This document shows, piece after piece, positions 1 through 63,384 of a stretch of 64,000 nucleotides of DNA; positions within the stretch are counted from its first letter, which is position 1, and the number at the start of each line of letters is the position of its first letter. The notes beneath the pieces are model-generated. The model worked only from the letters and a program-made list of their open reading frames with translations. It did no database searches and was not told where the DNA came from. The DNA is taken from assembly GCA_002269645.1 (NCBI GenBank), contig NIVC01000075.1, positions 195,760 to 259,759 on the forward strand, read 5' to 3'. Source of the stretch: Macrostomum lignano (Eukaryota). A program made the position numbers and the translations under genes.

Positions 1-411
<411 letters not shown>

Positions 412-1268
412 CGAGTACCAAAGAATGTTAAGATTTTCCATAAACGTCCATGGTTGATAGGCTAATTATTTTATGGTTTAAGCGTATCCCTAGGCCTAAG
501 CCTTCAGAGAGTCGCAGTATTTCAGCAATTACCGGCATGCGAAACAGTTTTTCGTAAACCCAGCCCAAATGAGTCAGTGATTTCAGAAATTTAATTAATT
601 CTGCCATTATCCTTTACATGTTAGCCATTTTAATTTGTTTTTTGTTAAAACGGTTTTGGGGTTAAAAAATCTTTCGTCAATAATATTTTAAGCAACTACT
701 AGTATGTAACGACGTCGTTAGCACGTTAAATTTTTAGTTTTAGTTTTAGTTTAGTTTTCTATCTGAGTTTTTATTACTTAAAATTATTGTAGTTGATTAA
801 TTTGCCGGTTCTCCAGCTATTTATTTAATGTAATTTATTTAGAGAAAAATGTACTTCAAGTTTTATTTATTTAAGTCCAAGTTATTATTACTTTTTTTGA
901 TAGACATCTTAGGTTTAAATGAATCGGATTTCCCCGCCAATTCAAATGTTGCCTCGCGCTCGTTTATTGTACTTTCCTCAACTCGGCGTTTTGTCTCGTC
1001 CCTGCGTGTTAACACTACTAATAATTGAACTAGCTAACTAATAAATAAATAATTAATTAATAATTAAATAATCGCTGACTACATCTCGAACTCGCTACGT
1101 CAACGTCACAAGTAGTATGCGAGTAGTCGGGTTACGATGAAAAGGAATTTTCGACATGCATATGCTATTTAGCAAGTTTTTGGTCGATTGCAATTAGGTG
1201 GTTGAAAGTTATTATAGCAAAAAAATCGAAGGTGAAACTAATGCAGGCTCTAAAACTGGGTTTTATTA

Positions 1269-1687
1269 CGAGAGGTATTTCAAAAGTTCGTAGAAAAGCC
1301 GTCTTTGCATAAACCTATAGCCTTGAAACTTTTCACAAATACTATTTCATATATCTATAGCCTGCAGCTAGATTTTCAGCAAAATTGATTGAAATGGCCA
1401 CCAGAAATCTGCCATCAAACTCTGAACCCCCCCCACTGCATTTCCTGCGTTCTCCAAGGAGCAGTCAAGAGCCATAATGCTGTTCCTGTTTCGTCGAGGC
1501 TCTAGCGCAAATGAAGCTGCTTTTAGAAGTTGCTTTGATAGCTGGCTGCAGCGCATGCGAACGTGCATAGAAATTGGTGGCGATTACGTTGAGAGATCAG
1601 ATTAAGATGCTGATTAATGTGTTGCAACCTGCTTTTTGATAACTGCTTGCTTTCTATCACTTTCTACGAACTTTTGAAATCCCCTCG
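1269..1687. mobile_element. Tc1/mariner-type MITE
   Basis: ~28-bp TIRs CGAGAGGTATTTCAAAAGTTCGTAGAAA / TTTCTACGAACTTTTGAAATCCCCTCG, flanked by TA on both sides (1267-68, 1688-89). Confidence 0.8.
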
Positions 1688-1831
1688 TATGTATGCATAA
1701 AACATGATTGCACAGCGGAGTCTTTGTTAGAGTTTCTTCAATGCAGTCGAGTAAGTCATGCAGGTTTTAATATGCATTAAGTACCTACTGTGCCGTGCTC
1801 ATAGCAACAACACAACATCCTGAAACAACAG

Positions 1832-3252
1832 GGACGAGCTGAAGATGATCACCTCGCCAGAGTCGGACAGAAACCTTTTCATTTTCAACGGCTTTGAGCA
1901 TCTGAAGCCTTGGGCTGAAAAATTCTCATCGCGGCTCTGCATGGAGTTGAAGCCTCCGAGCCCGAAGTTGTGCGACGCTGATGTTCAGTTAATGTCAATC
2001 TCGCCCTGCAAGTCTGAGAAAACGCAATCCTCTACAGTAAAATTCAAGTACAACACTGCTAAAAAGTGCATTAAGCGTTTTAGAAACGAGATCAATACAG
2101 GTTGCAGTAAGTTTCATTCTAGCGTTTTCATTTTATTCTAATCTTCTTAAAGAGTTGCTCTAAATTTGCTAATGCTACTTCAGAGTTGTTCAACGGTTTT
2201 TTAATCTTTGCAAAAAATCCCAGATAAGACTCTCGGCGAAAAGACACCGGAGCTTCAAACATCAGCGGTCATGGATTCATGGGACTGCAGTGCTAGCTAA
2301 TGCTAAAACACTGAGTGCACCTTCCTCAGTTGAGCTTACAAAATGCACTTAAACGCCGAACCAAACTTGCAGAGACCACCCGCGTCGACCCGATTGACGG
2401 CAGCGACCACCTGGAAGGCGAGTCTTGGACCAACATGTGCCACGAGTTCCGCTGCGATTCGAGCGGCAATACAATCCTGCCAACCTCAGTTAAGAGTAAG
2501 TTTCTGAGCACAGCTCTTCGTCCCTTCCAGCGCCGCACTAATTCGCCTCAGTCACTGCATGTCTGCCAGCCCTCTCTCAGTCACTGCATGTCTGCCAGCC
2601 CTCTCTCAGTCACTGCATGTCTGCCAGCCCTCCCTCAGTCACTGCATGTCTGCCAGCCCTCCCTCAGTCACTGCATGTCTGCCAGCCCTCCCTCAGTCAC
2701 TGCATGTCTGCCAGCCCTCCCTCAGTCACTGCATGTCTGCCAGCCCTCCCTCAGTCACTGCATGTCTGCCAGCCCTCTCTCAGTCACTGCATGTGTGCCA
2801 GCCCTCCCTCAGTCACTGCATGTCTGCCAGCCCTCTCTCAGTCACTGCATGTGTGCCAGCCCTCCCTCAGTCACTGCATGTCTGCCAGCCCTCTCTCAGT
2901 CACTGCATGTCTGCCAGCCCTCTCTCAGTCACTGCATGTCTGCCAGCCCTCCCTCAGTCACTGCATGTCTGCCAGCCCTCCCTCAGTCACTGCATGTCTG
3001 CCAGCCCTCCCTCAGTCACTGCATGTCTGCCAGCTCTCCCTCAGTCACTGCACCCGGCCAGCTCCGCAACAATCCAGTTGCTAGGCCGTCCACCACTCGC
3101 CCATTCCAGAATGCGTTGCTGCCGACTTCAGCTGCAAGCCGATTGGCGCGGCGCCGTTTCGCTGCAGAAACATCGACGGCGAGAAGAGAGAAAACTGCCA
3201 GTGCATCGACAAGGACGGCGAGGCCATGCTGGTGGTCGACAACCCCAACTGA
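1832..3252 (+). CDS. g0: last three exons (1832-2106, 2373-2495, 3110-3252) of the secreted double-vWA / Cys-rich protein; 5' part is upstream of the window
   Basis: AG/GT sites with matching phases. Exon sizes 275/123/143 nt are identical to g2. The terminal exon reads CVAADFSCKPIGAAPFRCRNIDGEKRENCQCIDKDGEAMLVVDNPN*. Confidence 0.85.
2547..3052. repeat. 29-bp minisatellite (CTCAGTCACTGCATGTCTGCCAGCCCTCC)n, ~17 units, intron 6 of g0
   Basis: Period 29 read directly; lies between donor 2496 and acceptor 3109. Confidence 0.97.
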
Positions 3253-3849
3253 CAGGCAGACAGTCAGCTGATTGGTATCGCGGCCCTCGAATCAAGCTGG
3301 AATAATCGGTGGCTTGCTGTGTGAAAGAAGGACTTGTCCGTTAACAGTCGAAGTTACTTGTTGATCTGATGTTTATATACTTATGAGCAGCCCCTGATGC
3401 GTCTCATCACACCTTTATAAAATTTATTAGTCTGTGTTTTGTGTTGGCTTTATTATTAATCGCCAATTAATTCTGCTTCTCATCTACACCGAATCGATGC
3501 GTCTCAAAACTCAAGCAATCGAACCTCTGTTATTAACTTAGCCTGAATGCTGTGCGCCTGATGCGACTACAAATCGAATTACAAATGTATCTAAGCTTGA
3601 GAAAAAACCGGACCGATTAAATGGAAAGTTTTGCACAATACCGAAAAATTATTTATATATTAGTGCTTGTTACTTTGCATCAGCTGTAAACTATGGTATC
3701 GAAAGTTTAACTACAAAACCACATTGAGACTTTTAGAATTCAGAATTTTAGTGCAATGGGTAAGTCAAAACTTGAGTTATCTCTTGCTTTGTTTGTCTTT
3801 GGCAAAAGCTACTTTCAGTGTTACTGAAACGCGTCTATGGAGGATTCTC

Positions 3850-4446
3850 TATGCCGCGAGTTCTCGGAGGGCGTCGACGAACTGGCTGACTGGCTCACCT
3901 GGCATCTGGGAACGCGACTTGAGCTTGTAGCGGTTGCTGATTGTGCTGTGCGACTGACCGAAGATCGTTGTCAGTGCAGCCACCAGCTTGTCAAACGTAT
4001 CAACGCTCGTCGTGGCAGATTCCTCAGCGCGTAGACTCTCTGGCCTTCCTCGCCTAGCAGATGAACGAGAATCGCCTTCTTGCGTGCATCCGATGCTTCT
4101 TTTAGGTCCAAGGCCTCCAGGTAGATCTTGAATCCTTCGATCCAACGATTCTAAGGCGTGTGTAGCTGTCCTGGGTGGGCGAGAAACACGCGTGGCTCGG
4201 AAATGCTCAGACTCGTCGCCATGTTGTACCTTGAGGCAGCATGGCTAAATGAATAAGATGCGAGAAGCGATTTCAAAGCCAAAGTTCAAAGTCACAAAGC
4301 CTTGAAAAGCCGGTGCGCACTTATATTGTAATTAAAAGCATGATTCAGCAAACACCAAACCCCCCACCCGGCGAGGCCGGTCTGGGCAGACGGACACCCC
4401 CCAGCCAATCAGAACGCGAGCACTCCCAACCGGCGTAAGCCGCATA
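3850..4446 (-). mobile_element. Ty3/gypsy LTR retrotransposon relic: LTR + PBS + degenerate gag 5' end
   Basis: On the minus strand the LTR ends ...TACAACA and is followed directly by PBS-like TGGCGACGAG (4221-4212). Gag-like peptides WNRWIEGFKIYLEAL..RKKAILVHLLGEEG and RYKLKSRSQMPGEPVSQFVDALRELA are broken by a stop and frameshifts. Confidence 0.8.
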
Positions 4447-5872
4447 CAAGGACTACTTAACAACTTAGGACGCTACACTCGCAAATGGTAGAAATTCTAG
4501 AAAAGGCCGCTTGATTTGGCTGTCTATGGTTTTTTAATAAGCCTTTTGGATAAAGAAGCAAGTACTAAGTGATAGATACGAGTAATTATAAAAGTTTTGC
4601 GCTATAATAATTATTTTTACAGTTATACAAACAATAAATATATGCAAATATTCCCAGCATAAGAATTGTAAATGACAATTGAAAAGTACGATATGCAACG
4701 AACCGGAAAACTCCGGACATAACTGTATAAGGAAAACATAGACGGCTATAACAAAGTTTGAAAATATACAGGTGTTTGAAAGAAACATTCAGCTAGGCTT
4801 CAGTTTGCGGAGTCAGCGAGAGCAAACGGTGGTTGATTGTCTGGACGTCTCGGAATCTCTGCGCACCATGCCTTTATAGATGGAGTTGGCCAGTCTTCGA
4901 GACACTCCATGCAGCAGATCTCGGTCCAGTTGAACATCAAAAAAATTTCGAAGATTTTCTCAAATACAAGCACGGAACTGCTAACACAACGCTGCCCAGA
5001 ACCAAGAGAATGGGCATAACAGAAGCAGGCAAAGACAACTAACCATTCAGGCGAATGGCTCAGTTTCCCTCGAGATACAAGCAGTGGAAGTATCCAGACC
5101 AGGCAAACTTGTTGCAATTGTTCGGTCAGGCAAATTTTCTTTGTGGGAAACGTAGCCACAAATGTAGTAAAGAGAGGCTTTCTTCGGTAGAAATTCGAGC
5201 AACGGATAAACTTAGCTCGTCAAAACTGACAGTCTCTTCATCGGTGACATCATGCTGACAACATGCTGATGGCGAGTGATCTGGTGGCGAAGCGTGAAGT
5301 TGCGCATAGAGCTGTATGCGGCGGAGGCGAGCACTAGCCATAATCTGATCCACTGATATGTAATAGCAGCCTCCATGACCTTGACGATAAATTTTTACAA
5401 GCACATCGCGCCGATACGCCAAGACTGTGAAGTCGCTCTTAACTCGAACGGAGGACTTAACAGTGCGCTCATGAATGAGCAAAAAATCGACTCGCAAATC
5501 CTGACATTTGAACAATCCAGCCTCCGGAGGTAACAAAATCCAGGCTTAAAGCTGACATAATGAATAGTGCCCACGAGACAACTCTGTCGACAGCATTGAA
5601 GGCAGTCAATTCATCAGGGGCCCTAGCTCTGTCGACTAACAGCACACCTCGCCGACCAGCATCTCTAGAGCGTCCTAAAATATTTGAAACAGGCTGATAC
5701 AACTTAGTAAGTAAACTAAGTACACAACCATTCATACTTACTTGAGACAGTCTGACGCAGGGAAGTCAATGAAAAATCTTTAAAGATTGCGGGTGGGTCG
5801 ATGGGGCGCGCGTGTATGGCGGTTAATACGTTTCAGTGGTGCATTTTCAGGCCAGTGATTTTTGCAAACTCC
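4447..5872 (-). mobile_element. P-superfamily DNA transposon relic, truncated (one TIR only)
   Basis: Starts CAAGGACTACTTAACAAC after GCCGCATA. Matches the complete copy at 39016-40917 up to position 40461. Transposase-like fragments RQGHGGCYYISVDQI and VSRGKLSH. Confidence 0.75.
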
Positions 5873-6099
5873 TTAATTACCCCCGCGGTAGAGCTTTTCC
5901 CTAGGCTGATCCCAGGCGAAACTAGCTCTCTCCCCCAACAACAACAAAAGCCATCTATACTAATAGCAGACCAGCATTTCGAGCATGGATCGGGCCCCAT
6001 GAACATCTGCATTATAGCAGAAATTTGATTTGCACAGAAACTACTCAATTACGAGCTACTTTCACTGTCAATTTAAAGCTCAGAATTCAAGTACAAAGG

Positions 6100-6324
6100 G
6101 TATGTAAAAACTTTAGTTGTTTATGGCAGTAAATATTTTACTTGCTTAGGTACGGTGAGACGCGTTTCTGTAACACTGAAAGGAGCTTTTGCCAAAGACA
6201 AACGAAGCAAAGGCTTCAATATAAGTACGAAAGTCAAAGGGACCAGCTTAAGCGATACTTCATAGAGTTTTAGCTGTGAAAGAAAAGCGTAGCTTACACT
6301 TGAATAATCAGCTCACAAATCGAA
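6100..6324 (+). promoter_or_regulatory. Conserved upstream block of the vWA genes with a TATA-like TATAAG (6220-6225)
   Basis: The block is conserved upstream of g1, g2, g3 and g4. TATAAG lies ~100 nt before the ATG. Function is inferred from position only. Confidence 0.45.
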
Positions 6325-9300
6325 ATGCTCTCCAACACTTATCCAAGATGCTGGAAGGTTCTTTCTGTCATTGCTCTCTTAATACTGGTGCATCAGATTG
6401 AGCTCAGCTGCTCGACAAGCCCCTGCATCAACCTTGACTTGGTGGTCGCAGTGGACACATCGTCTTCATGCTCTCAAACACAGTTCGACAGGCTGCTCTC
6501 AGATGTGAAGGCCTTGGTCTCTAAATTTCCAATCGGTCCGACAAAAACTCGACTGGCTCTGATCGGCATGTCGCAGACTGCGCAGGTTCTCGCCAACTTC
6601 GACGACGTGATGTCTCTGTCGGACTTCAACTCCGCGGTCGACAGGCTGACGATGAGTTCCGAACGAGCCGAAATCTCGAAGGGCGTCAAGCTGGCTCGAG
6701 AATCCGTACTCAACAAGGCCAGGGCTGCTCCGACTCCAAGACTCTTAGCTCTGGTGAAGGACAGGCAGTGCGCTGAGAGAATAACGGGATCGAGCGACGC
6801 GGAACTGGCTTCGATTAAGTCGGAAGTCGCAGTCCTGAAGTTGACGGGAAACGCAGTGCACGCAATCGGAATCGGTGGATTGTGGAACAGGTGATTAAAT
6901 TTTATTGTTTTTTCTTTAGCTCACATACAATTTGTTTTCATAGCTATATATAGTTTCAGTTGATGCCTGAACCCTGAAAGTCTTTATAGCACAGTTTTAT
7001 CATCCGTTAAAAAGCAACTTTTTTTAATAATGGTGCAGCCAGAAAGTTTATTTGAAGGATAAACCAACCCCACCCACTGAGAGAAACGACGTCGAAACGA
7101 CGTCGTCCCGCACAACGTGATGTTTTTACATCGCATGTATGTCGCAATGTCGTATTGATGCCGTATTCATTTTCATGTAGTATTCGTGCCGTGGCAGGCA
7201 ATTTTTCTCTTTCATTCGTTAAATTACTTTTTCGTTTGAACACGAACAGTACTAACTTAAAAAACGACAAAAAACGATAACAGTATGTCGTGGAATTCTT
7301 TGTAGCATTTAGAAGAGCATGAGATTGAAATCGCGCCAAGGCGTGTAAGAAAGTAAAGCAACAACTGTCTTTTAGCAACTGTCTATGGTTAAAACTGCGG
7401 TGATATCACTAGAAAACTAGAAGGGGTACGAAGAAAATAATTTATAAGTCCTCTTAAGTTTTTAGTCAGCTACTGCTCAAAAACATACAATTATATTCAA
7501 CGACATGACTGGTCGCCCTGCAGAACCTTCATTTAAAGTACCCCCTGGGCAAGTGCGTCCCGCACTGGAGCTGTGCAACATTAATTTCACAATGCGGGAG
7601 CTCGCTCGCCTTGGCGCGATTTCAATTTCATGCTTTTCTGAATGCTACGAAGGTTTCCACGACATGCTGTTATCTTTTTTGTCGTTTTAAGTTAGTACTG
7701 TTCGTGTTCAAACGAAAAATATATTTTACGAACGAAAGAGGAAAATTGCCTCGTGGCCTTAAATGCTATTTTAATCTATCTGCTGTTACTAAAGGTTGGT
7801 TGGAAGTTTCCTAAACCATAAAAGAAACTATCAAATACAAGTAGAATAGCTTGAAATATTTCTTTGCTAGAAAAAGATGGCTAAGGGCATCATTATTTAA
7901 ACTTCACTCGAACTCAAAATTACATGTAAAATGATAGACAAGCACACGATAGATAAATAATCAGCGGTCCCAGTGCGTGACAACGATTGTCTGGCGAGCA
8001 AGATTGTCCGCCGGTAGCGCGAGCCATAGACAATCGTTGTCACGCACTGCGACCGCTGATTCTTTGCATTGTTTTTCTGTTTGACGATCCTACAGACAAT
8101 GCATTGTTTGTAGTATGGATTGTTCTGCATTAAAATGTGAATAATGATCGTCGAATTGCTAAACAATGAACTTCTCTATGGGGAAATCACATAGAAAGTT
8201 GTAGAAAAACCGGTAAATTCCATTATTGTATAAGTATTAAAGTGAGTAAAGGAGTGTAGGTAAGATAGGCTAATCGTGTTTAAATATAATTGCACGCGAC
8301 TAACCGCGGAAGATGAATTACGAAAATATAAAATTTATATAATTTTCCCAGCTGACAGAATTAAACATAACAATGGTAAAAAGATAAAAATAGAGAAAAA
8401 TAGACAGACAGGAGGCGAGAGGAGACAGAGAGGAAAAATTTTGGTAACAGTAACAGTGATATTAGTAAACTAACTGCATATAAAATGAGAGACTTAGATA
8501 ACAGGGCACAATGAGATATTACCATAAGTATTATAGATTAGCTATGAACATATTGCACTGCAAAAGAAAACAGTGGCGCAACCAGGGGGGGGGGGGGCGG
8601 GGGCGCGGTGGCGGTCGCGCCCCCCTTAGGCGGAGATCCAAAAAAATCAAAGGGGGGAACAGAGCCACCCCTCCCGGGACTTTATCCTCCAGAATCCGAC
8701 CCCCCTCAAAAGTTTCTGGTTGCGCTACTGAAAGAAAAAGGAAAACTTTTTTTCGAAGACGGCTGTGAAGAAGGCGAAGAAAAAGCTCAGTTAATAAGAC
8801 ACAGCGAGCATTTTGTAAACTACACCTTTTCGCGTTCTATTTCGATAAAACTGCATTCAATTTCGGCAAACTCGCTTTCATTTTCGGCATCAGCTAATAG
8901 ACCATAGCCCATAGACCTAATTGGTTGTCAACCAAGGTATTGCAGTGACGAAGACAGACTAGGAGAATCGGCAGCGGGTGACAGGTAAGGATGCTGCGGT
9001 TGATGACAGGATATTTACTATGAGAACTGGAGTAACAGGTGGATCTTGCAAGTGGAAAACATCACATTGGAAAGCAATGCGGGCATGGCGACTGCAATGG
9101 CAGGGACTTGAGGAGCATGGATTTGCGTGGTTGAAGAGGATCCAACATCTGGACTGTGATGCGAAGAGAACAATTAGAGGAGAGAAAAGATTTGACCTGG
9201 AAGAGTGTGGCACCTGGGCAGCTTGCAGTGCATTGCTATTGTTGCGTCACTGTTCCACTTCATTCCTTCTCGCAAGTCGCTGATTCGCATCTAGCAGGTA

Positions 9301-12300
9301 CTGACCAATGCATGCCCCAATGGCTGCATCTGTCATTTGGGTGCTGATATCATTTCTGAAAAAAGTGATATTTAAAAGGCCTGCCTGTATACCGCTATGA
9401 ATTTTTCCAGCCAAATTTCTCTATTCTTTTCAAATTAGCATGTCAAAGAGTGTATGCTTTACAAATGTGACAGCTTAATATGTGGAAAAATTAATGTTTA
9501 TTAAATAGATAGTGTCATTAGAAGAAGTAAACTACTTATCAATGATACCAATGACCAATGAACAATGACCAATAGATAGATGTTGATTTTTTTGCTGTCC
9601 TAGACGAGAAGGGGTGGTTGTCTATTTTATCGCCCTTACATGAGATGGCAGTAAGTATTGCATTGGCTAGCTAATTTTAAATATAATTATAAGAGCATTA
9701 TGTATGAATACGAGCGTAGATACGAGCGTATAGTAGATGTTGATCTAAGGGGATAGGCTATATTTTTGTCCTAAAAGCCCCGTAACGACAACTACTTCCG
9801 TAAGTGTCCTCCGCTCTCACAAACATCTATTGGATGTTGGGCACTAAAGTACTTGGCGGGCCAGGGACCAGGGACTTGCACCCAGCATTTGTGCGAGCGT
9901 AGTTTTGGCACTCAAGTTGAACACCCATTTGTGGCTTAGTACCTAGAATAGCTTATTTAAACTTAAATTCGATTGTATAAGTGGGTTGAATTACATCCTG
10001 ACATAGTGGATAATATAACATGATGATTTAGCTCGCATCTTGTCGGCAAAATAAATTTTAGCCACGAACTGAAGGCCATTTTTGGAACCAACTACCTGCT
10101 CTTCAAGAACACAAACAAGGCTATGGAGTCCGCCAAGTCGCTAAACAACAAAGTTTGCCCGAAGCCAGCCTGCAAAAGCTCGGGTCGGACTGTGAAGCGT
10201 GAAACTTGCTTTGGAAAGTCGCAGCACGTATTAACGGTAAACGACAGTGCTTTCACTTCATCTGGCATGGAAGTCTGCAGACAGCAGATTGCTCGATCAT
10301 TTCAGTCTTGCGGTGAGTTACTCCATTTGCTGATTTCTTTCTCTCTGAGGGCTCAATTTTTACTCAAACGCAAAGACTTCTTGGGCCTTAGGGTTGGAAA
10401 AAATGAAAAGTTTTCTGATTTGCATAAAATTCCCAGTATACTTGTACGAGCGTAAATTGCAAATATGAGTAGTTTAACATGTACTTGAAGTAGAAAGTAA
10501 ACCAGCACACGAGGCACTACTAATAAAGGCGGACCATTAACTGTCTTGTCATTTAGTTGGTCTATTAGTTAATTTATTGCGGTTCACGTATATTACAGTG
10601 CAATTTTGAAGACGCGTTTGCCCACAAAAGTACTTCTTGTGGTGATACGAGCTATTGTCAACAGATTTTTATGGAAAGAATGACTGGATAGGCAAGGACC
10701 CTAGAGGCAAGGATGAGGCCAGAACAGAGTGCCCCTAAGCCGAGGTATCATCTAGGCCTGGAAGTGACTCTGGCCCAATATCGTTTGATCAACTAGACTG
10801 TCCGAGTTAACTGTGAAACTATGTGAACGAAATTCCGGGTCGGGGCAGCTTTAAAAACTGGACACTGCTTCGTAACAGCCGCTTGCTCTTTTGATGCAAC
10901 GAAGTATAAACAGCTATTTTTAGGTACTGTTAGCACCAAAGTGTCCTGTGACAGCGTTGGCGCGGTACTGGTAGGTGAAAACCCGCTAAAGAGTTGCGAG
11001 ATAGAGGTGCTGAAGGCCGAGCTCCGTGTGCCTTGTGTACTCTCTTCCCGGATCGTACCCGCTGAGCACGCTGCGTGGTTGTAACATCAGAATGTCATCT
11101 ATCCACTGAATCAGCTACAAATAAGCACGTTTACTGTTCCGACTGGCTGAACGCGCGAGAATCTCTTCCCGAGCGCTGTACCGAAACTTATGGCCTAATG
11201 GCCTTGGTGGGCGACAGCCCTTGTCTAGGTTCACCCTCTCCCGACTTTCCACTTTGGCGAGCTCTCCTGGCCCTCCAGTTTGGCCCTTGCCTAGGTTCAC
11301 CATCTCCCGACTTTCCACTTTGGCGCTCTCCTGGCCCTCCAGTTTGGCCCTTGCCTAGGTTCACCATCTCCCGACTTTCCACTTTGGCACTCTCCTGGCC
11401 CTCCAGTTTGGCCCTTGCCTAGGTTCACCATCTCCCGACTTTCCACTTTGGCGCTCTCCTGGCCCTCCAGTTTGGCCCTTGCCTAGGTTCACCATCTCCC
11501 GACTTTCCACTTTGGCGCTCTCCTGGCCCTCCAGTTTGGCCCTTGCCTAGGTTCACCATCTCCCGACTTTTTACGATCGATTACAACTTTTACTGTCCGC
11601 CTGTTGTAAACTTTATCTCTGTAATAACTCACGCGGACTCCACTGGTTGAGTAAGTTAGAACTTCTCGAGAAAAACTTGAGCGACTGCTAGTTAGCGCAC
11701 GCGTATATATATATTTAATAGGCACGACGTACATTAGTACACACGATACACGTACACGCGAGGAAGAACAATTAATGATGTGCATATACGAGCTACTTAA
11801 GCAAAGTCAACGTTCCCACGCAACCCTACACCCTCAAGCAACCTCAGATCAGTCCAGTGGCACTTTGTTACAATCTTAAGTGTTAGTTTATTCTTAGCCA
11901 CGAGCTAATTTGTCCCACTAGCAATTGGACACCTGTGGTCTGATGAAACTCAATTTAAAGAAGCACTGGTTAAAAGTTTACGGTAACGTGCTTATTTTGC
12001 GTAGCTGCTATTTAGAAGCTCTTAACAGTCGACCACTGGTTATAAATCACTAGTAAAACATTGCTTTTCAAGGTGGGATGAGAGAAGAAAGCTACGGGGT
12101 CAGGTCAGTCTAGAACAGAAAGCAGCATGCATGTGTTTTTTTTACCTCGGGATAAAACATAGAACTCGAGCGTACAGTAGTGTAGTAATGAGTTGAAACT
12201 CATTTGGCCCTAAACTACGGCGAGATGTAGCGAATGTAAAGTTTACAGCGTTAGGCTGATGTCCTAGCGAATATTCTTGATCTGCGAATAATCCCGAGAA

Positions 12301-15300
12301 ACACGTTGCTATGATATGCAACACCTGATATTACTTGCTAACTCTTTAAATTGCACTACGCTCGTAATGCTTCCAGTAAGCTCACAACGAAATTCATTCT
12401 TCACTAAGACTGCTCCAAAACCAGGTAAAAACATTATCTAAACATTTGCCGTTTCCAGTCGAGAAGCAGTCCTGCAGCAAGATAGAGCGTACAGTACAGT
12501 ACTAGCGTACAGTACTTTTAAAACACCACAGCGCCCTGTGACAGCCCACACAGTACCGCTGCCCTCACGGTGCCCCTAAATTCACGCCCCCACCCTAATC
12601 TTGCGGTGTTCCCACCCACACAGCGCACCTACCTCAACTATACCATACCAAACCACTAATTGCATATCTACTTTCACTTTCATCTATTTACAATCATTGA
12701 TGTTGAAATAAAGTCATATATATAATCAATTTATATACAATAAGGCAACACTGGAGTAAAGTACACCAGCAAACACTTGCAGCCGAGAAACATTCCTGCT
12801 ACAAGATGGAGCGAAGCATTGGCTCATGCCAAGCTGACGGCAATTCGGAAATCGTTGAGACGCTGCAGTTTCTCGACCGAAAGAAACAGTCGTGCGTGAC
12901 ATATGAGGAGAAGCACAAAGTGAATTGCTGTAAGTTTCCTGTTCTTCCAATTAATGCCAGTCAGTCAGCCAGTCAGTCACTCATTCGTCAATTAGCCAGT
13001 CAGTCAGTCAGTCAGTCAGTCAGTCAGTCAGTCAGTCAGTCAGTCAGTCAGTCAGTCAGTCAGTCAGTCAGTCAGTCAGTCAGTCAGTCAGTCAGTCAGT
13101 CAGTCAGTCAGTCAGTCAGTCAGTCAGTCAGTCAGTCAGCCACTCACTCACTCAAGTCAGTCAGTCAGTCAGTCAGTCAGTCAGTCAGTCAGTCAGTCAG
13201 TCAGTCAGTCAGTCAGTCAGTCAGTCAGTCAGTCAGTCAGTCAGTCAGTCAGTCAGTCAGTCAGTCAGTCAGTCAGTCAGTCAGTCAGTCAGTCAGTCAG
13301 TCAGTCAGTCAGTCAGTCAGTCAGTCAGTCAGTCAGTCAGTCAGTCAGTCAGTCAGTCAGTCAGTCAGTCAGTCAGTCAGTCAGTCAGTCAGTCAGTCAG
13401 TCAGTCAGTCAGTCAGTCAGTCAGTCAGTCAGTCAGTCAGTCAGTCAGTCAGTCAGTCAGTCAGTCAGTCAGTCAGTCACTCACTCAGTCAGTCAGTCAG
13501 TCAGTCAGTCAGTCAGTCAGTCAGTCAGTCAGTCAGTCAGTCAGTCAGTCAGTCAGTCAGTCAGTCAGTCAGTCAGTCAGTCAGTCAGTCAGTCAGTCAG
13601 TCAGTCAGTCAGTCAGTCAGTCAGTCAGTCAGTCAGTCAGTCAGTCAGTCAGTCAGTCAGTCAGTCAGTCAGTCAGTCAGTCAGTCAGTCAGTCAGTCAG
13701 TCAGTCAGTCAGTCAGTCAGTCAGTCAGTCAGTCAGTCTGCAAGGATGTCTATTTTCCAGTCAGAGCAAGCGAGTGCAAAGATCAAGTCGCAGATGTGGT
13801 GATAATGCTGGATAAATCCTATAGCATTCGTAGTCACTACAGCACTGTTGTGAACTCAGCGAAGGCAATAATCCTGTCGCTAAACATTGGAGAGAGAAAT
13901 GTTCGGATTGGCGTGCTATCCTTCAATGGCTATTCGTCTTACTCAGGATCAAAACGGCATGTGAAGCATCTGCTAGAAATGCTTGTAAACCTTGGCGATG
14001 AGTTCGACGTCTTCGAAATTATAGGAAAGGTTGACGAAAGCAAGACTTTAGAAGAGTTTCGGGACACGCACACTGGTTTCGCCCTCAAAGAAGTCAAGAA
14101 GCTTTTCAACTCAAAAGGCCGAAGAAACGTTTTCAAAGCCGTCGTTATCATCACGGATGGTAGGAGCAACGACGCCAAAGAACTGTTTCAAGCAGTGTCG
14201 GATATAAAAAACGACGATGTCACGCTGTATGCGGTAGGAGTCGGCGACCCGTACGACTTAGATTTGTGAGCCTCTTTGTTAAGATCTTATTTTTAGTTTG
14301 TTCTTTAAATTAGATAGAAGATATTAGCACCAATGGTTGGCTGAAAAGTATACAAATCATATACATGTAAAAATATTAAATACCACGGTGTCACTCTTTA
14401 TGGCACAGTAGTCGACAGCCAATTTGACGTGAACCAGCGAGCCACTTTATATGTCTTATTTCTATACTGCTTTAAAATGCGTATGAAAAGTTTAAAGCAG
14501 TATGAAGTGAGTTATTATTTCACACCAAGGACACCTGTTTGTAGTGGACTTATAAATATATAAGACAACTCTCCTTTGCTCCAATGAAGGGGTAAATTTA
14601 GCACTGAACTAGAAATCTGCGCCCCACATTAATTTTTAAAGCCTTCAATCATTAAGTTATTAAGACAACTGTCCAGACTAAGATATCAGATCCCCTATGA
14701 GCTTTGGCTCAAAGCATCTGTGAAACCCCCATGAGCCAAAGGATTTAAGCCATTCCCAAATGAGCTTTGGCATTTCAGCGATCTTCTCACGAACCAAGAC
14801 AATTAGGGGGCTAGCTTTCCGGGGGGGGGGTTCGAGGGGGGTTTAGGATATCAGCAATCCTTCCATGAGCCTCAGCATGTAAACAATTCCCCTAAGCCGC
14901 AGAGTTCAAGCGATTTCCTTCATGAGCCTATGAGTATCTATGATTATAGAGCGATACCTCTATAAACATTTACTGATTAGCAGGGTGATTCTCTTAAGGT
15001 TGAACCCTAACCCTGAGCCTAATACCCCTATCCTAAGCACTAACTCTAAACCTGCTGAAAGTCACAGCAGTTTAGTCATTCTTCCAGGAGCCAAAAAAGT
15101 TCAGCAATCAGCACGTTAAGTTTTGGTATGTCAGCGATTCTCTATGAGACTAAAGACTCAGAATTTCACATATCCCACCTCTATGAGCCCTGACTATTCA
15201 GTGTTGTGTACTTGTACTTTGTACTTCTTTGTTTATGGCCCTCCCCGTGCGCCTTTGATTTATTTTATAAATGCGATAAGTGTGCCGTGCTCATAGCAAC

Positions 15301-16985
15301 TACACAACATCCTGCAACTACAGTGACGAGCTGAAGATGATCACCTCGCCAGAGTCCGACAGAAACCTCTTCATTTTCAACAAATTTGATCAGCTAAGGC
15401 ATTGGGCTTTAAATTTCTCAGCTCGGCTTTGCATGGAGTTGAGGCCGCCAAATCCGAAGTTGTGCGAAGCTGATGTTCAGATCAAGTCCATCTCGCCGTG
15501 TCTGTCTGAAAAAATGCAAACCACAACTGTAAACTTCAAGTACGACACCGTTAAAAGTGCATCAAGCATCTTAAAAACGAAATAAGTAATGGTTGCAGTA
15601 AGTTGCATTTTCTCATTTTTATATATTTCATGTGTATTGTGATGCTCTTTAATACCAATAATGCAGATATACTAGTATACTACGTGCAATTTTCCTGAAA
15701 GCTTGAGACTTGAGAGTTGCTCAAGAGTTGCCCAAGAATTTCACGGTTTAATCAAAAGTTTTTTCATCGTTTGCTTTTAAGTCCCAAAGAAAGACTCTCG
15801 ATGAAAAGACACCGTAGCCTCAAACGCCAGCCGTCATAGGACTGCTGGAGAATAATACTCAAATATTCAGTGCACCATGCTCAGTTGAGCTTACAAAATG
15901 CACTTAATGCGAACCAAACTTTTAGAGGCCACCTGCGTCGACCCGATTGACGGCAGCGACCACCTGGAAGGCGAGTCTTGGACCAACATGTGCCACGACT
16001 TCCGCTGCGACTCCAGCGGCAATACAATCCTGCCAACCTCAGTTAAGAGTAAGTGTCTGAGCACAGCTCTTCGTCCCTTCCAGCGCCGCTCCAAGTCACC
16101 TCAGTCACTGCATGTCTGCCAGCCCTCCCTCAGTCACTGCATGTCTGCCAGCCCTCCCTCAGTCACTGCATGTCTGCCAGCCCTCCCTCAGTCACTGCAT
16201 GTCTGCCAGCCCTCCCTCAGTCACTGCATGTCTGCCAGCCCTCCCTCAGTCACTGCATGCCTGCCAGCCCTCCCTCAGTCACTGCATGTCTGCCAGCCCT
16301 CCCTCAGTCACTGCATGTCTGCCAGCCCTCCCTCAGTCACTGCATGCCTGCCAGAGCTCCCTCAGTCACTGCATGTCTGCCAGCCCTCCCTCAGTCACTG
16401 CATGTCTGCCAGCCCTCCCTCAGTCACTGCATGCCTGCCAGAGCTCCCTCAGTCACTGCATGTCTGCCAGCCCTCCCTCAGTCACTGCGTGTCTGCCAGC
16501 CCTCCCTCAGTCACTGCATGTCTGCCAGCCCTCCCTCAGTCACTGCATGTCTGCCAGCCCTCCCTCAGTCACTGCATGTCTGCCAGCCCTCCCTCAGTCA
16601 CTGCATGTCTGCCAGCCCTCCCTCAGTCACTGCATGTCTGCCAGCCCTCCCTCAGTCACTGCATGCCTGCCAGAGCTCCCTCAGTCACTGCATGTCTGCC
16701 AGCCCTCCCTCAGTCACTGCATGCCTGCCAGAGCTCCCTCAGTCACTGCATGTCTGCCAGCCCTCCCTCAGTCACTGCGTGTCTGACTGCACCCGGTCAG
16801 CTCCGCAACAATCCAGTTGCTAGGCCGTCCACCACTCGCCCATTCCAGAATGCGTGGCTGCCGACTTCAGCTGCAAGCCGATTGGCGCGGCGCCGTTTCG
16901 CTGCAGAAACATCGACGGCGAGGAGAGAGAAAACTGCCAGTGCATCGACAAGGACGGCGAGGCCGTGCTGGTGGTCGACAACTGA
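6325..16985 (+). CDS. g1: secreted double-vWA Cys-rich protein; exons 6325-6890, 10062-10312, 12783-12929, 13761-14265, 15324-15597, 15926-16048, 16849-16985 (apparent -1 frameshift in exon 5)
   Basis: Signal peptide MLSNTYPRCWKVLSVIALLILVHQIELSCS. vWA motifs DLVVAVDTSSS and DVVIMLDKSYS..THTG..IITDG. Splice phases are 2,1,1,2,1,1. Exon 5 is 274 nt versus 275 in all other copies (A-run at ~15553). Confidence 0.85.
7196..7751. mobile_element. Foldback/MITE-like element with ~145-bp imperfect inverted arms (7196-7343, 7607-7751)
   Basis: The arms are reverse complements; the mirror ORFs 7007..7378(-) and 7611..7814(+) share FKLVLFVFKRK. No TSD established. Confidence 0.6.
8571..8730. mobile_element. 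hAT-type MITE (160 bp)
   Basis: TIRs CAGTGGCGCAACCAG / CTGGTTGCGCTACTG; 8-bp TSD AAAGAAAA at 8563-8570 and 8731-8738. Confidence 0.85.
11217..11570. repeat. 64-bp tandem repeat, ~5.5 units, intron 2 of g1
   Basis: TGGCCCTTGCC recurs at 11281, 11345, 11409 and 11473. Confidence 0.95.
12459..12488 (+). pseudogene. Relic 5' fragment of a g4-type exon 3 (possible 30-nt in-frame micro-exon)
   Basis: TTTCCAG|TCGAGAAGCAGTCCTGCAGCAAGATAGAGC matches the g4 exon-3 start (CTCCAG|CCGAGAAGCAGTCCTGCAGCAAGATGGAGC, 47477). It is followed by GTACAG. Copy at 34027-34056. Confidence 0.6.
12958..13738. repeat. (CAGT)n microsatellite filling intron 3 of g1
   Basis: Direct reading; between donor 12930 and acceptor 13760. 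Confidence 0.98.
16100..16785. repeat. 29-bp minisatellite, ~23-24 units, intron 6 of g1
   Basis: Same unit as 2547-3052, with variant units (GCCTGCCAGAGCTCC). Confidence 0.97.
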
Positions 16986-17770
16986 CAGGCAGACAGACAG
17001 CGGATCCGAATCGCAGCCCTCGAATCAAGCTGGATTAATCGGTGGATTGCTGTGTAAAAGAAGGACTTGTCCGTTAATAATAGTCGAAGTTACATGTTGA
17101 TCAGATATTTGTTTATGAGCAGCCTCTGATGCGTCTCATCACACCTTTATAAAATTTATTAGTCTGTGTTTTGTTTTGGTTTTGTTACTAATTGTCAATT
17201 AATTCTGCTGCTTCTCATTTACACCGAATCGATGCGTCTCAAAACACAAGCAATCAGACATCTGTTATTAACTTAGCCTGAAAGTTATGCGCCTGATGCA
17301 ACTACAAATCAAATTATCTAAGCTTGAGAATAAACCGGAATGATTAAATGGAAAGCTTTCTCTGATACCGAAATAAGATATATGTATTAGTGCTTGTTAC
17401 CTTGCAATAGCTGTAAACCATTGTATCGAAATTTTAACTTGTAAAAAAGCCACATTGAATTGTATTTTAGAATCCAGATTTTTTGTGCAAAAGGAAAGTC
17501 AAAACTTTAGTTGTCTATGGCAGTGAATATTTTACTTGCTCAGAAGCCCCGTGTACAGTTACAGTGAGACGCTTTTCAATAACGCAGAAAGGAGCTTTTG
17601 CCAAAGACAAACGAACCAAAGGCTTCAATATAAGTACGAAAGTCAAGGGACCAGCCAAGGACAACAAGGATCAAGTTGTCCTTGGACCAGCTAAAGCGAT
17701 ACTTTATAGAGTTTAGGCTGCGAAAGAAAAGCGTAGCTTACACTTAATAATCAGCTCTGCACAAATCGAG

Positions 17771-24734
<6,964 letters not shown>

Positions 24735-25330
24735 CAGGCAGACAGTCAGCTGATTGGTATCGCGGCCCTCGAATCAAGCTGGAATAATCGGTGGCTTGCT
24801 GTGTGAAAGAACTAGTCCGTTAATAACAGTCGAAGTTACTTGTTGATCTGATGTTTGTATACTTATGAGCAGCCCCTGATGCGTCTCATCACACCTTTAT
24901 AAAATTTATTAGTCTGTGTTTTGTGTTGGCTTTATTATTAATCGCCAATTAATTCTGCTTCTCATCTACACCGAATCGATGCGTCTCAAAACTCAAGCAA
25001 TCGAACCTCTGTTATTAACTTAGCCTGAATGCTGTGCGCCTGATGCGACTACAAATCGAATTACAAATGTATCTAAGCTTGAGAAAAAACCGGACCGATT
25101 AAATGGAAAGTTTTGCACAATACCGAAATGTTATTTATATATTAGTGCTTGTTACTTTGCATCAGCTGTAAACTATGGTATCGAAAGTTTAACTACAAAA
25201 CCACATTGAGACTTTTAGAATTCAGAATTTTAGTGCAATGGGTAAGTCAAAACTTGAGTTATCTCTTGCTTTGTTTGTCTTTGGCAAAAGCTACTTTCAG
25301 TGTTACTGAAACGCGTCTCTGGAGGATTCT

Positions 25331-25927
25331 CTATGCCGCGAGTTCTCGGAGGGCGTCGACGAACTGGCTGACTGGCTCACCTGGCATCTGGGAACGCGAC
25401 TTGAGCTTGTAGCGGTTGCTGATTGTGCTGTGCGACTGACCGAAGATCGTTGTCAGTGCAGCCACCAGCTTGTCAAACGTATCAACGCTCGTCGTGGCAG
25501 ATTCCTCAGCGCGTAGACTCTCTGGCCTTCCTCGCCTAGCAGATGAACGAGAATCGCCTTCTTGCGTGCATCCGATGCTTCTTTTAGGTCCAAGGCCTCC
25601 AGGTAGATCTTGAATCCTTCGATCCAACGATTCCAAGGCGTGTGTAGCTGTCCTGGGTGGGCGAGAAACACGCGTGGCTCGGAAATGCTCAGACTCGTCG
25701 CCATGTTGTACCTTGAGGCAGCATGGCTAAATGAATAAGATGCGAGAAGCGATTTCAAAGCCAAAGTTCAAAGTCACAAAGCCTTGAAAAGCCGGTGCGC
25801 ACTTATATTGTAATTAAAAGCATGATTCAGCAAACACCAAACCCCCCACCCGGCCGAGGCCGGTCTGGGCAGACGGACACCCCCAGCCAATCTGAACGCG
25901 AGCACTCCAACCGGCGTAAGCCGCATA
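25331..25927 (-). mobile_element. Ty3/gypsy LTR-gag relic, copy 2
   Basis: PBS at 25703-25694. Here the gag N-terminal frame is open: MATSLSISEP..WNRWIEGFKIYLEALDLKEASDARKKAILVHLLGEEGQR. Confidence 0.8.
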
Positions 25928-63367: not shown

Positions 63368-63384
63368 GTGAGTGAGATCTCAGT

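What the first reader, a model, noticed from the sequence alone, without database searches (positions are those of the whole stretch)
13761..14265. Hypervariable MIDAS face of vWA2: g1 and g3 differ almost only by replacement changes in one ~260-nt patch
Seen (manual alignment of 13761-14265 with 35117-35627): 12 substitutions, 11 non-synonymous and 1 synonymous, plus an in-frame 6-nt indel. All fall within 13819-14080; the remaining ~185 nt of the exon are identical. Changes are DKSYS/DKSGS, N/D, RHVKH/LHVRD, G/R and EEFRDTHTGF/DEYEFRGTNTGS. The rest of the g1/g3 pair is almost invariant: exon 1 has 1 change in 566 nt, exon 2 has 2 synonymous changes, exon 3 has none, and the adjacent ~1-kb intron has only a handful. 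g2 (DKSFS..AHTYTGY) and g4 (DKSGS..RNTHTGH) vary at the same loops while the metal ligands D-S-S, T and D stay intact. Established: the betaA-alpha1 and alpha3-alpha4 loops form the ligand-binding MIDAS surface. Inference: positive or balancing selection on ligand specificity, as in immune, allorecognition or fertilisation proteins.
Basis: partly seen in the sequence, partly recalled or inferred. Interest (0 to 1): 0.87.

Follow-up and report, generated by a model that had tools for sequence, protein, structure and literature searches.

The report
Fast-evolving vWA2 binding face, flatworm genes
In a tandem family of secreted two-vWA-domain genes of the flatworm Macrostomum lignano, near-identical gene copies differ almost only by amino-acid changes around the metal-binding site of the second vWA domain, which suggests selection for new binding specificities, although import of sequence from unseen gene copies is not excluded.

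Summary
g1 exon 4 (13761-14265) and g3 exon 4 (35117-35627) differ by 12 substitutions (11 replacement, 1 silent) plus a 6-nt in-frame indel, all within 13819-14079. This is the densest cluster in a 16-kb duplicated unit that is otherwise about 0.55% diverged (scan P=5e-5).

The window is Macrostomum lignano scaffold NIVC01000075.1. The genes encode 671-aa proteins: signal peptide, vWA1, Cys-rich linker, vWA2, Cys-rich tail. My 7-exon g4 model equals PAA91747.1 exactly.

A third close copy (P0157/P0156, outside the window) changes the picture. g3 carries the central haplotype. g1 and P15x each diverged from it by about 10 replacement and 1-2 silent changes, at different codons. On this three-copy tree exon 4 has N:S = 21:3 and the other six exons 7:16 (Fisher P=9e-5). 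Replacement divergence is 13x (g1) and 4.7x (P157) the flanking non-coding rate. Thirteen of 17 variable residues lie in MIDAS-side loops (P=1e-4), and the metal ligands are invariant.

Caveats: dN/dS>1 is not significant from the counts alone (P=0.17). Gene conversion is active in the family. g1 has an exon-5 frameshift and no annotated product. Diversifying selection is the best explanation, but it is not proven.

The parts
13761..14265 (+). g1 exon 4. It encodes the first ~3/4 of vWA2, including all five MIDAS ligands. The variable patch is 13819-14079.
   Evidence: AG/GT splice sites, frame and translation; Pfam VWA 1.4e-19
35117..35627 (+). g3 exon 4, the partner of the comparison. It carries the central type-A haplotype shared at 11 of 12 patch sites with P0156/P0157.
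   Evidence: part of the annotated partial protein PAA91745.1 (P0178)
21009..21519 (+). g2 exon 4 (type-B vWA2, DKSFS..AHTYTGY)
48324..48828 (+). g4 exon 4 (DKSGS..RNTHTGH)
   Evidence: the g4 model equals PAA91747.1 exactly
6325..16991 (+). Gene g1. Exons: 6325-6890, 10062-10312, 12783-12929, 13761-14265, 15324-15597, 15926-16048, 16849-16991. The frame is broken by a 1-nt deletion near 15552.
15545..15560 (+). g1 exon-5 frameshift: A5 becomes A4, so the exon is 274 nt instead of 275 nt, giving ...KYDTVKSASSILKTK*
   Evidence: the other four window copies and P0157 are intact
17771..24734 (+). Gene g2, intact 672-aa model (exon 2 starts at 19385)
27825..37822 (+). Gene g3, intact 671-aa model. 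Exons: 27825-28390, 31561-31811, 34350-34496, 35117-35627, 36688-36962, 37291-37413, 37680-37822.
45530..51033 (+). Gene g4 = BOX15_Mlig002694g1 (PAA91747.1), 671 aa, 7 exons
1832..3252 (+). g0 fragment: exons 5-7 of a g2-like gene. Its 5' half lies in a run of Ns upstream of the window.
281..16268 (+). Left copy of the ~21.4-kb tandem duplication. It pairs with 21761-37632 at 98-99% identity.
21761..37632 (+). Right copy of the tandem duplication
12950..13745 (+). (GTCA)n microsatellite filling intron 3. It ends about 15 nt before the exon 4 acceptor and is present in every family member.

Best explanation
The window holds a tandem array of paralogous Macrostomum lignano genes. Each encodes a secreted protein of about 671 aa: signal peptide, vWA1, Cys-rich linker, vWA2, Cys-rich (VWC-like) tail.

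The family evolves in two modes at once. Duplication and gene conversion keep vWA1, the linker, the tail and even the introns 94-100% alike. Exon 4 encodes the metal-ion-dependent adhesion site (MIDAS) of vWA2 and the loops around it, and it accumulates amino-acid replacements far faster than neutral DNA next to it.

The replacements flank the five metal ligands but never hit them. They concentrate in five elements: the betaA-alpha1 loop, a family-specific betaB-betaC hairpin, the Thr loop before alpha4, the betaD-alpha5 loop and the betaE-alpha6 loop.

The most likely mechanism is diversifying (positive) selection on the ligand-contact surface of vWA2. New gene copies would then acquire new binding specificities while sharing a constant scaffold.

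Shown: the anatomy, the rates, the N:S contrast and the topological location. Inferred: that vWA2 binds a ligand through its MIDAS, that the changes alter specificity, and that selection rather than sequence import drove them.
For: Anatomy:
- The g4 model reproduces PAA91747.1 exactly.
- There are two Pfam VWA domains.
- AF2 gives pLDDT 86.4 and pTM 0.87.

Rates:
- The patch is the densest cluster in 16 kb (scan P=5e-5).
- Patch pN is 0.0545 against a non-coding rate of 0.0055.

Replication in a second lineage:
- P0156/P0157 differ from g3 by about 10 replacement and 1-2 silent changes at other codons of the same exon.
- The flanking non-coding branches are only 0.2-0.5%.

Contrast within the gene:
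- Exon 4 has N:S 21:3 and the other exons 7:16 (Fisher 8.8e-5). Omega is about 2.1 against 0.15.
- dN over the non-coding rate is 12.9 on the g1 branch (P=4.7e-7) and 4.7 on the P157 branch (P=5e-4).
- There is a sharp exon/intron edge: intron 4 has 10 changes in 1058 nt (0.95%) on the whole tree.

Location:
- 13 of 17 variable residues lie in MIDAS-side segments that make up 30.5% of the exon (P=1.3e-4).
- Family-wide, these segments show 3.43 states per column against 2.34 elsewhere (P=5.8e-6).
- D17, S19, T102 and D132 are invariant in 7 vWA2 types.

Deep paralogs:
- Exon 4 has dS 0.27-0.72 and dN/dS 0.63-0.80. Exon 1 has dS 0.04-0.10 and dN/dS 0.16-0.5.

No donor:
- 8-9 of the 12 variant alleles match nothing in the window beyond chance length.
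- g1-specific motifs are absent from six family loci.
Against: - dN/dS>1 is not significant from exon-4 counts alone (binomial P=0.17-0.20).
- The comparison with the intron rate assumes that the changes arose in place. Conversion is active in the family: P157 exon 1 carries a g4-like tract with 3 N and 7 S, and g3 exon 6 has paralog-matching silent changes. Some states are shared across paralogs: TCT GGT in g3 = g4 = P15x, N31 and H106 in g1 and g4, V143 and N155 in P15x and g4.
- g1, the most divergent copy, has a frameshift in exon 5. It has no annotated product; the record's model P0171 is a g1-exon1/g2 chimera. Its haplotype appears in no other record.
- The MIDAS-side segments were defined by me from secondary-structure topology after seeing the data. 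No 3-D distances could be computed.
- No expression, ligand or population data exist.
Confidence: 0.55

Rival explanations
1. Mosaic gene conversion without positive selection. Exon 4 looks special only because it is the one part of the gene where paralogs differ enough for conversion to be visible.
For: - Conversion tracts are visible elsewhere: P157 exon 1 is g4-like (3 N + 7 S) and g3 exon 6 positions 16011/16014 match g0/g2/g4.
- g3's TCT GGT lies in a 58-nt exact match with g4.
- Several states are shared across paralogs.
- Multi-nucleotide clusters are common in this region.
- The assembly has an N-gap next to the window, and 36% of its length lies in chimeric scaffolds (PMC10733133), so unseen copies are plausible.
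Against: - Variant sites are interleaved with stretches where g1 = g3 but every known paralog differs, so known donors would need tracts of only 3-15 nt.
- No donor exists for Y20, K68/H69, G88, D101 or F106 among 7 vWA2 types or in six loci.
- Paralog-derived tracts should bring about 28% silent changes, but only 3 of 24 are seen (P about 0.06).
- Even a close unseen donor would itself need the same replacement-biased history.
Confidence: 0.27
2. g1 is a decaying pseudogene and/or exon 4 sits in a mutational hotspot created by the adjacent ~0.8-kb (GTCA)n microsatellite. The changes are neutral and persist in loops simply because loops tolerate change.
For: - g1 has a frameshift in exon 5.
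- g1 has no annotated product and the record's model is chimeric.
- The microsatellite ends about 15 nt before the exon.
- N:S of 11:1 or 21:3 is statistically compatible with no constraint (P=0.17-0.20).
- Silent divergence in exon 4 is nominally 2.6x the intron rate (3 observed against 1.15 expected, P=0.11).
Against: - Relaxed constraint cannot raise the rate 13-fold above flanking non-coding DNA.
- Exon 4 of g1 has no stop or frameshift, its indel is in frame, and all MIDAS ligands and core residues are intact.
- The same pattern occurs in P15x, an intact haplotype present in many copies and in both assemblies.
- There is no excess of changes in intron 4 right after the exon (0.95%).
- g3 has the same microsatellite and no unique change in exon 4.
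- The A5 to A4 deletion is a typical long-read homopolymer error.
Confidence: 0.1
3. Assembly artefact. g1 and g3 are not tandem paralogs but haplovariants or homeologs wrongly expanded into tandem, or the differences are consensus errors.
For: Mlig_3_7 is documented to contain collapsed or expanded haplovariants and chimeric scaffolds (PMC10733133). There is an N-run directly upstream of the window. The g1 frameshift looks like a homopolymer error.
Against: - The differences are codon-structured: an in-frame indel and no stops.
- They are clustered in one exon and absent from 185 nt of the same exon and from the flanking intron. Random consensus error does not do that.
- The interleaved order g0-g1-g2-g3-g4, with different neighbours for g1 and g3, is not a simple haplotig duplication.
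- g3's haplotype is independently supported by P15x at 11 of 12 sites.
- If g1 and g3 were alleles, the sequence contrast and its interpretation would stand, shifted towards balancing selection.
Confidence: 0.05

Closest known systems
Mussel proximal thread matrix protein 1 (PTMP1; PDB 4CN8/4CN9/4CNB)
   Same: It is a secreted protein built from two vWA domains with a MIDAS. It is the best non-collagen sequence match (profile E=5.3e-17), and the match includes the CM..KP segment after the second domain. It is also a structural match (TM about 0.6).
   Different: PTMP1 has adjacent A domains, without the ~140-aa Cys-rich linker or the C-terminal VWC-like tail. Identity is only about 23%. To my knowledge, no tandem family with one hypervariable domain is described for it.
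Collagen VI / matrilin-type vWA domains (PDB 9HAN; 'cartilage matrix protein-like' of Ostrea edulis)
   Same: Collagen VI is the best profile hit (5.8e-22). The nearest non-Macrostomum proteins in the large databases are multi-vWA, collagen-VI-like or matrilin-like proteins at 22-30% identity.
   Different: Those are large multi-domain matrix proteins under ordinary constraint. The flatworm proteins are short, lineage-specific (no relative above 30% identity outside M. lignano) and modular, with one constant and one variable vWA.
Integrin alpha I-domains and the specificity-determining loop of integrin beta I-domains
   Same: The fold and the DxSxS...T...D MIDAS are the same. The variable positions correspond to ligand-contact positions of integrin alpha2 I: the x of DxSxS (N154), two residues after the second Ser (Y157), the neighbours of the MIDAS Thr (L220) and two residues after the MIDAS Asp (E256). 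These numbers are from my own knowledge of Emsley et al. 2000. The variable hairpin sits between betaB and betaC, where beta-integrins carry their specificity loop (own knowledge; topology).
   Different: The flatworm protein is not part of an integrin: it has no transmembrane segment or heterodimer partner. Metal and ligand binding are untested.
Plasmodium TRAP vWA domain
   Same: It is a MIDAS-type vWA adhesin and a structural hit. It is known for polymorphism attributed to selection (own knowledge; reviewed in PMC9019593, which I did not read in detail).
   Different: TRAP variation is allelic within a single-copy parasite gene and is driven by host immunity. Here the variation is between recent tandem or dispersed paralogs of a free-living animal.
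Multigene families that combine concerted evolution with diversifying selection on a recognition domain (e.g. MHC, plant R genes, reproductive proteins such as abalone lysin/VERL; own knowledge)
   Same: The flanks are homogenised, the recognition module is hypervariable, replacements exceed silent changes in the binding surface, and the genes are arranged in tandem.
   Different: The variable module here is a vWA/MIDAS domain in a flatworm. Function, expression and ligand are unknown.

Membership tests
von Willebrand factor type A domain (Pfam PF00092) | Significant match to the family profile | tested here: met
   Exon 4 alone scores 1.4e-19. Full proteins score 3e-45 to 2e-47 with two stretches.
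von Willebrand factor type A domain (Pfam PF00092) | Alpha/beta Rossmann-like fold: a central sheet (betaA-F) flanked by helices | tested here: met
AF2 gives pLDDT 86.4 and pTM 0.87 with the expected order of elements.
MIDAS-type (metal-dependent) vWA domains | DxSxS motif after betaA, Thr in the alpha3-alpha4 loop, Asp after betaD | tested here: met
   D17-K-S19-x-S21, T102 and D132 are present. D17, S19, T102 and D132 are invariant in 7 vWA2 types. S21 is Thr in P0158.
MIDAS-type (metal-dependent) vWA domains | Actual metal coordination and metal-dependent ligand binding | not testable with these tools
   This needs recombinant protein, a metal-binding assay or a crystal structure.
PTMP1-like two-vWA secreted matrix proteins | Secreted, two tandem vWA domains, detectable sequence relationship | tested here: met
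   There is an N-terminal hydrophobic signal-like segment, two VWA domains, and a profile E of 5.3e-17 to 4CN8.
PTMP1-like two-vWA secreted matrix proteins | Same domain architecture (A1-A2 directly adjoining) and collagen binding | tested here: not met
   The architecture differs: a ~140-aa Cys-rich linker (exons 2-3) and a Cys-rich tail (exons 5-7) are present. Collagen binding is not testable here.
Genes under diversifying (positive) selection | dN/dS significantly above 1 in the region or at sites | tested here: inconclusive
   pN/pS is 3.4 in the patch and omega is about 2.1 in exon 4 on the 3-copy tree, but binomial P is 0.17-0.20. PAML/HyPhy site models were not run: there are too few close sequences and recombination is present.
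Genes under diversifying (positive) selection | Replacement:silent ratio significantly higher than in the rest of the same gene, and replacement rate above the local neutral rate | tested here: met
   21:3 against 7:16, Fisher 8.8e-5. dN over the non-coding rate is 12.9 (g1) and 4.7 (P157). This is valid only if the changes arose in place.
Genes under diversifying (positive) selection | Selected sites concentrated on the interaction surface | tested here: met
   13 of 17 fall in MIDAS-side segments (P=1.3e-4). Family-wide variability is higher there (P=5.8e-6). This is based on topology, not on distances, and the segments were defined after seeing the data.
Balanced polymorphism (allorecognition or immune type) | Excess intermediate-frequency alleles or trans-specific polymorphism in populations | not testable with these tools
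   No population or second-species sequences could be reached. The metagenome scan found nothing, and no relative above 30% identity exists outside M. lignano.
Gene-conversion mosaic | An identifiable donor whose sequence matches the variant tract, including its silent sites | tested here: not met
   This holds only for TCT GGT (58-nt match to g4). All other variant alleles match 8-13 nt, which is the chance level. g1 motifs are absent from L001-L006. Unseen copies cannot be excluded.

The most novel reading that the evidence does not exclude
The family is a flatworm recognition system built on a vWA/MIDAS scaffold: mate or gamete recognition, seminal-fluid/receptor conflict, or self/non-self or pathogen recognition. 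A constant vWA1-plus-tail module would do the common job. A cassette-like vWA2 would be actively diversified between copies, through recurrent selection and possibly short-tract exchange favoured by the conserved (GTCA)n intron next to the exon. This would make a vWA domain the variable recognition element of a multigene repertoire in a hermaphroditic neopolyploid animal.
Probability: 0.12. Interest if true: 0.8.

Novelty: new member of a known kind. Interest (0 to 1): 0.5.

Why it matters
The family is uncharacterised. No paper in the searched library mentions its gene IDs. It has no relative above about 30% identity outside M. lignano.

It offers a clean natural experiment. Several gene copies are nearly identical over about 10 kb, yet differ by about 10 amino acids each on one face of one domain. 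Specificity-determining residues of a MIDAS domain can therefore be read directly from the sequence and tested by swapping a handful of residues.

M. lignano has transgenesis, RNAi and in situ methods, so expression site and function are readily testable. In a genus where reproduction-related genes evolve fast (PMC8662610), such a family is a candidate for sexual-conflict or recognition biology.

It also illustrates how concerted evolution and diversifying selection partition a gene in a neopolyploid genome. If the cause turns out to be conversion from unseen copies, the finding is ordinary family dynamics.

Tried and rejected
- **Word-indexed search with exon 4 alone:** it found nothing, even though family members are in the collection. 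A full-length family alignment was needed.
- **Metagenome DNA scan:** a scan for an invariant 23-mer gave 0 hits.
- **First AF2 run (4 sequences):** it was too uncertain for residues 57-76 (pLDDT below 50). Its helix there was replaced by a beta-hairpin in the 7-sequence model.
- **Residue-level mapping of the middle region by PDB sequence alignment:** unreliable.
- **Model coordinates:** they are not exposed to scripts, so no distances to the MIDAS could be measured.
- **29-bp minisatellite as coding sequence:** I first took it (e.g. 16099-16785) for coding because it is open in three frames. The exact match of the g4 model to PAA91747.1 places it in intron 6.
- **g2 or g4 as conversion donors:** rejected for all sites except TCT GGT.
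- **P0157 itself as donor of g3's patch:** rejected, because its own five patch-region changes are interleaved and absent from g3.
- **DGR-like or deaminase-like targeted mutagenesis:** considered from the substitution spectrum (7 transitions, 5 transversions, no base bias). I saw no support.
- **g0 as a hidden donor:** its visible exons 5-7 are g2-like, and its 5' half lies in an N-run.
- **Literature search for expression of the gene IDs:** no result.
- **M. lignano adhesive proteins:** they carry vWD domains, not vWA, so there is no link.
Full report
**What is in the sequence**

The window is eukaryotic. A neighbouring Tudor-domain ORF is 100% identical to Macrostomum lignano BOX15_Mlig031761g3. 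The window maps to scaffold NIVC01000075.1, positions 195,760-259,759, of assembly Mlig_3_7.

It contains a tandem array on the + strand:
- a 3' fragment g0 (exons 5-7);
- four full genes g1 (6325-16991), g2 (17771-24734), g3 (27825-37822) and g4 (45530-51033).

Exon boundaries were derived from splice sites and paralog conservation. They are validated by the g4 model, which reproduces the annotated 671-aa protein PAA91747.1 residue for residue.

The proteins have a signal-like N-terminus, vWA1 (exon 1), a Cys-rich linker (exons 2-3), vWA2 (exon 4 plus the start of exon 5) and a Cys-rich VWC-like tail (exons 5-7). Only VWA is recognised by Pfam. A ~21.4-kb unit (281-16268) is repeated at 21761-37632 with 98-99% identity.

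**Check of the observation**

The alignment of 13761-14265 with 35117-35627 shows exactly what was described: 12 substitutions, of which 11 are replacement nucleotides in 10 codons and 1 is silent, plus a 6-nt in-frame indel. All lie within 13819-14079. The claims about exons 1-3 and intron 4 also hold.

Against the background of the duplicated unit (0.55% outside the patch), the patch is the densest 262-nt window. The scan-statistic P is 5e-5, or 0.007 if adjacent changes are collapsed into single events.

Two corrections are needed:
- The 11:1 ratio is not significantly above the neutral expectation by itself (binomial P=0.19).
- g1 and g3 also differ in exon 6 (5 nt), and by a 1-nt deletion in an A-run of g1 exon 5 that truncates the g1 reading frame.

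**Is there a donor in the window?**

For each variant allele I looked for the longest exact match containing it elsewhere in the window.
- Only g3's TCT GGT (three of the twelve differences, including the one silent change) lies in a long match: 58 nt shared with g4.
- g3's GAT at codon 70 is the state of all other paralogs.
- The remaining alleles match 8-13 nt, which is the chance level.
- Between the variant sites g1 and g3 are identical, while g2 and g4 differ at many positions. No g2 or g4 tract can therefore explain the patch.

**The wider family changes the picture**

A profile search with full-length models recovered the family in M. lignano on at least five scaffolds and in two independent assemblies.

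All members share nearly identical vWA1 and tail, but have very different vWA2. Seven vWA2 types are now known.

For the same paralog pairs:

| Exon | dS | dN/dS |
|---|---|---|
| Exon 1 | 0.04-0.10 | 0.16-0.5 |
| Exon 4 | 0.27-0.72 | 0.63-0.80 |

The gene is thus a mosaic of homogenised flanks and an old, fast-evolving middle.

Two further copies are of the g1/g3 type. P0157 lies 4.7 kb upstream of the window, inverted, across an N-run. P0156 lies on scaffold NIVC01001851.1. In exon 4 they carry g3's state at 11 of the 12 patch sites plus the insertion. They also carry about 10 replacement and 1-2 silent changes of their own at other codons: 23, 38, 59, 66, 99, 137, 143, 155 and 168.

This 'P15x' haplotype is the common one, seen in 9 records from both assemblies. 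The g3 haplotype occurs only in g3. The g1 haplotype occurs in no annotated protein.

**Branch-resolved test**

In a three-way alignment of the whole genes, g1, g3 and P157 form a near-star tree. The non-coding branch lengths over 4,479 clean sites are 0.20%, 0.31% and 0.49%.

| Branch | Exon 4 replacement (N) | Exon 4 silent (S) |
|---|---|---|
| g1 | 10 (plus the indel) | 1 |
| P157 | 9 | 2 |
| g3 | 0 | 0 |

In addition, one site (codon 66) has three states. Counting it as two replacement changes gives a total of 21 N : 3 S in exon 4.

- The other six exons together have 7 N: 16 S. Fisher P is 8.8e-5, and omega is about 2.1 against 0.15.
- Replacement divergence in exon 4 is 12.9 times (g1, P=4.7e-7) and 4.7 times (P157, P=5e-4) the branch's own non-coding rate.
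- The excess stops at the exon boundary. Intron 4 has 10 changes in 1058 nt on the whole tree. This argues against a regional mutational hotspot caused by the (GTCA)n microsatellite that fills intron 3.
- The test for omega>1 from exon-4 counts alone remains non-significant (P=0.17).

**Where the changes lie**

With seven vWA2 types as the alignment, AF2 gives a confident model: pLDDT 86.4, pTM 0.87, and 86-95 over residues 51-80. It shows the classical vWA order of elements, plus a beta-hairpin (56-61, 64-68) inserted between betaB and betaC. This hairpin varies in length and is deleted in P0159.

I defined MIDAS-side segments from the topology: betaA-alpha1, the betaB hairpin up to betaC, the Thr loop up to alpha4, betaD-alpha5 and betaE-alpha6. 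They cover 30.5% of the exon.

| Comparison | Variable residues in MIDAS-side segments | P |
|---|---|---|
| g1 vs g3 | 8 of 10 | 0.0018 |
| P15x-specific | 6 of 8 | 0.012 |
| All type-A | 13 of 17 | 1.3e-4 |

- Across the seven types these segments are also the most variable: 3.43 against 2.34 states per column (P=5.8e-6). Residue 65 has seven states in seven types.
- The ligands D17, S19, T102 and D132 never change. S21 is Thr in one paralog.
- N31, L38, G88 and D152 lie elsewhere.
This result is supportive, not conclusive.

**Interpretation**

The best explanation is diversifying selection on the ligand-contact face of vWA2 in a family whose other parts are kept uniform by duplication and conversion (confidence about 0.55).

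Conversion is clearly active: P157 exon 1 is g4-like with 3 N + 7 S, and g3 exon 6 carries paralog-matching silent changes. The assembly is known to be imperfect (PMC10733133). Against this rival:
- no donor was found;
- the interleaving of variant and identical stretches would require very short tracts;
- silent changes are fewer than paralog-derived tracts would bring (P about 0.06).

Pseudogene decay of g1, or a mutational hotspot, cannot produce a 13-fold local excess with an intact frame and intact ligands. Neither explains the intact, multi-copy P15x lineage. Assembly error cannot produce codon-structured, exon-limited differences.

Whether g1 and g3 are true tandem paralogs or mis-expanded haplovariants affects only the label: paralog divergence or allelic polymorphism.

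**Comparison with known systems**

The domain is a bona fide MIDAS-type vWA domain. The closest solved relatives are collagen VI A-domains, mussel PTMP1 (also a two-vWA secreted protein), vWF A3 and integrin alpha I domains.

Architecture and lineage restriction set the family apart. There is no relative above about 30% identity outside M. lignano.

The evolutionary pattern, conserved scaffold with a hypervariable recognition surface, is well known from other families. Here it is a new instance, on a vWA scaffold in a flatworm. Function, expression and ligand are unknown, and no paper mentions the gene IDs.

I therefore rate it as a new member of a known kind, with moderate interest.

Noticed in passing
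window 15545-15560 (g1 exon 5): g1 has a 1-nt deletion in an A-run (274-nt exon against 275 nt in g0, g2, g3, g4 and P0157). It causes a frameshift and a stop after ...KYDTVKSASSILKTK. This is either a young pseudogene or a homopolymer assembly error.
   Followed up: partly
window 6325-6890 joined to 19385-24734 (protein P0171 = PAA91744.1): The public annotation at g1 is a chimera of g1 exon 1 spliced to g2 exons 2-7, skipping g1 exons 2-7. g3 is annotated only as a partial 391-aa model (PAA91745.1), and an 85-aa fragment is PAA91746.1.
   Followed up: partly
window 2546-3052, 16099-16785, 24030-24534, 37465-37640, 50091-50843: A 29-bp minisatellite is open in all three frames (a 29-aa 'SLHVCQPSLSHCMSASPPSVTACLPALPQ' pseudo-repeat). 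It lies in intron 6 of every family member and its copy number differs between genes.
   Followed up: partly
L002 about 5309-8050 (scaffold just upstream of window position 1): A run of Ns about 2.7 kb long directly abuts the window start. The 5' half of g0 is therefore missing, and P0157 lies beyond it in inverted orientation, followed by its own 143-aa gene and Tudor paralog. The inverted join may be a scaffolding decision.
   Followed up: partly
window 3330-3341, 5051-5054, 10320-10323 (with a 15-nt indel): There are tight multi-nucleotide replacement clusters between the two copies of the duplicated unit in non-coding DNA (10 of 12 adjacent bases differ at 3330-3341). These are complex mutation events or micro-conversions, and they remain unexplained.
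   Followed up: no
L002 10001-10566 (P0157 exon 1); window 37291-37413 (g3 exon 6): Likely gene-conversion tracts. P0157 exon 1 carries 3 replacement and 7 silent differences from g1/g3 that match g4. g3 exon 6 has ACC TGC changed to ATT TGT, plus two silent sites that match g0/g2/g4.
   Followed up: partly
protein P0158/P0016 (scaffold NIVC01001851.1): One paralog has DQSST instead of DxSxS (second Ser replaced by Thr) in vWA2. It is the only departure from the canonical MIDAS ligands among the seven vWA2 types.
   Followed up: no
L005 23224-23735 (scaffold NIVC01003242.1): An unannotated g2-type gene follows the type-A gene P0179. The 'type A then type B' gene pair is thus a repeated unit of the family on several scaffolds.
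   Followed up: partly
window 3852-5765, 25334-27046, 38422-40128 (minus strand): Repeated ORFs of 130-143 aa on the minus strand lie in the intergenic DNA after g0, g2 and g3. They are probably a transposable element carried along with the duplications.
   Followed up: no
window 58358-64000 and 62307-64000: This is a Tudor-domain gene (BOX15_Mlig031761g3; its called range would end at window 64647, beyond the window). Within its range, two blocks of short tandem repeats (62.3-63.1 kb, and 28-nt units at 63.39-64.0 kb) are open in several frames. Paralogous Tudor genes follow P0156 and P0157.
   Followed up: no
window 1-411: A (TCTA)n-type microsatellite lies at the very start of the window, at the edge of the assembly gap.
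   Followed up: no
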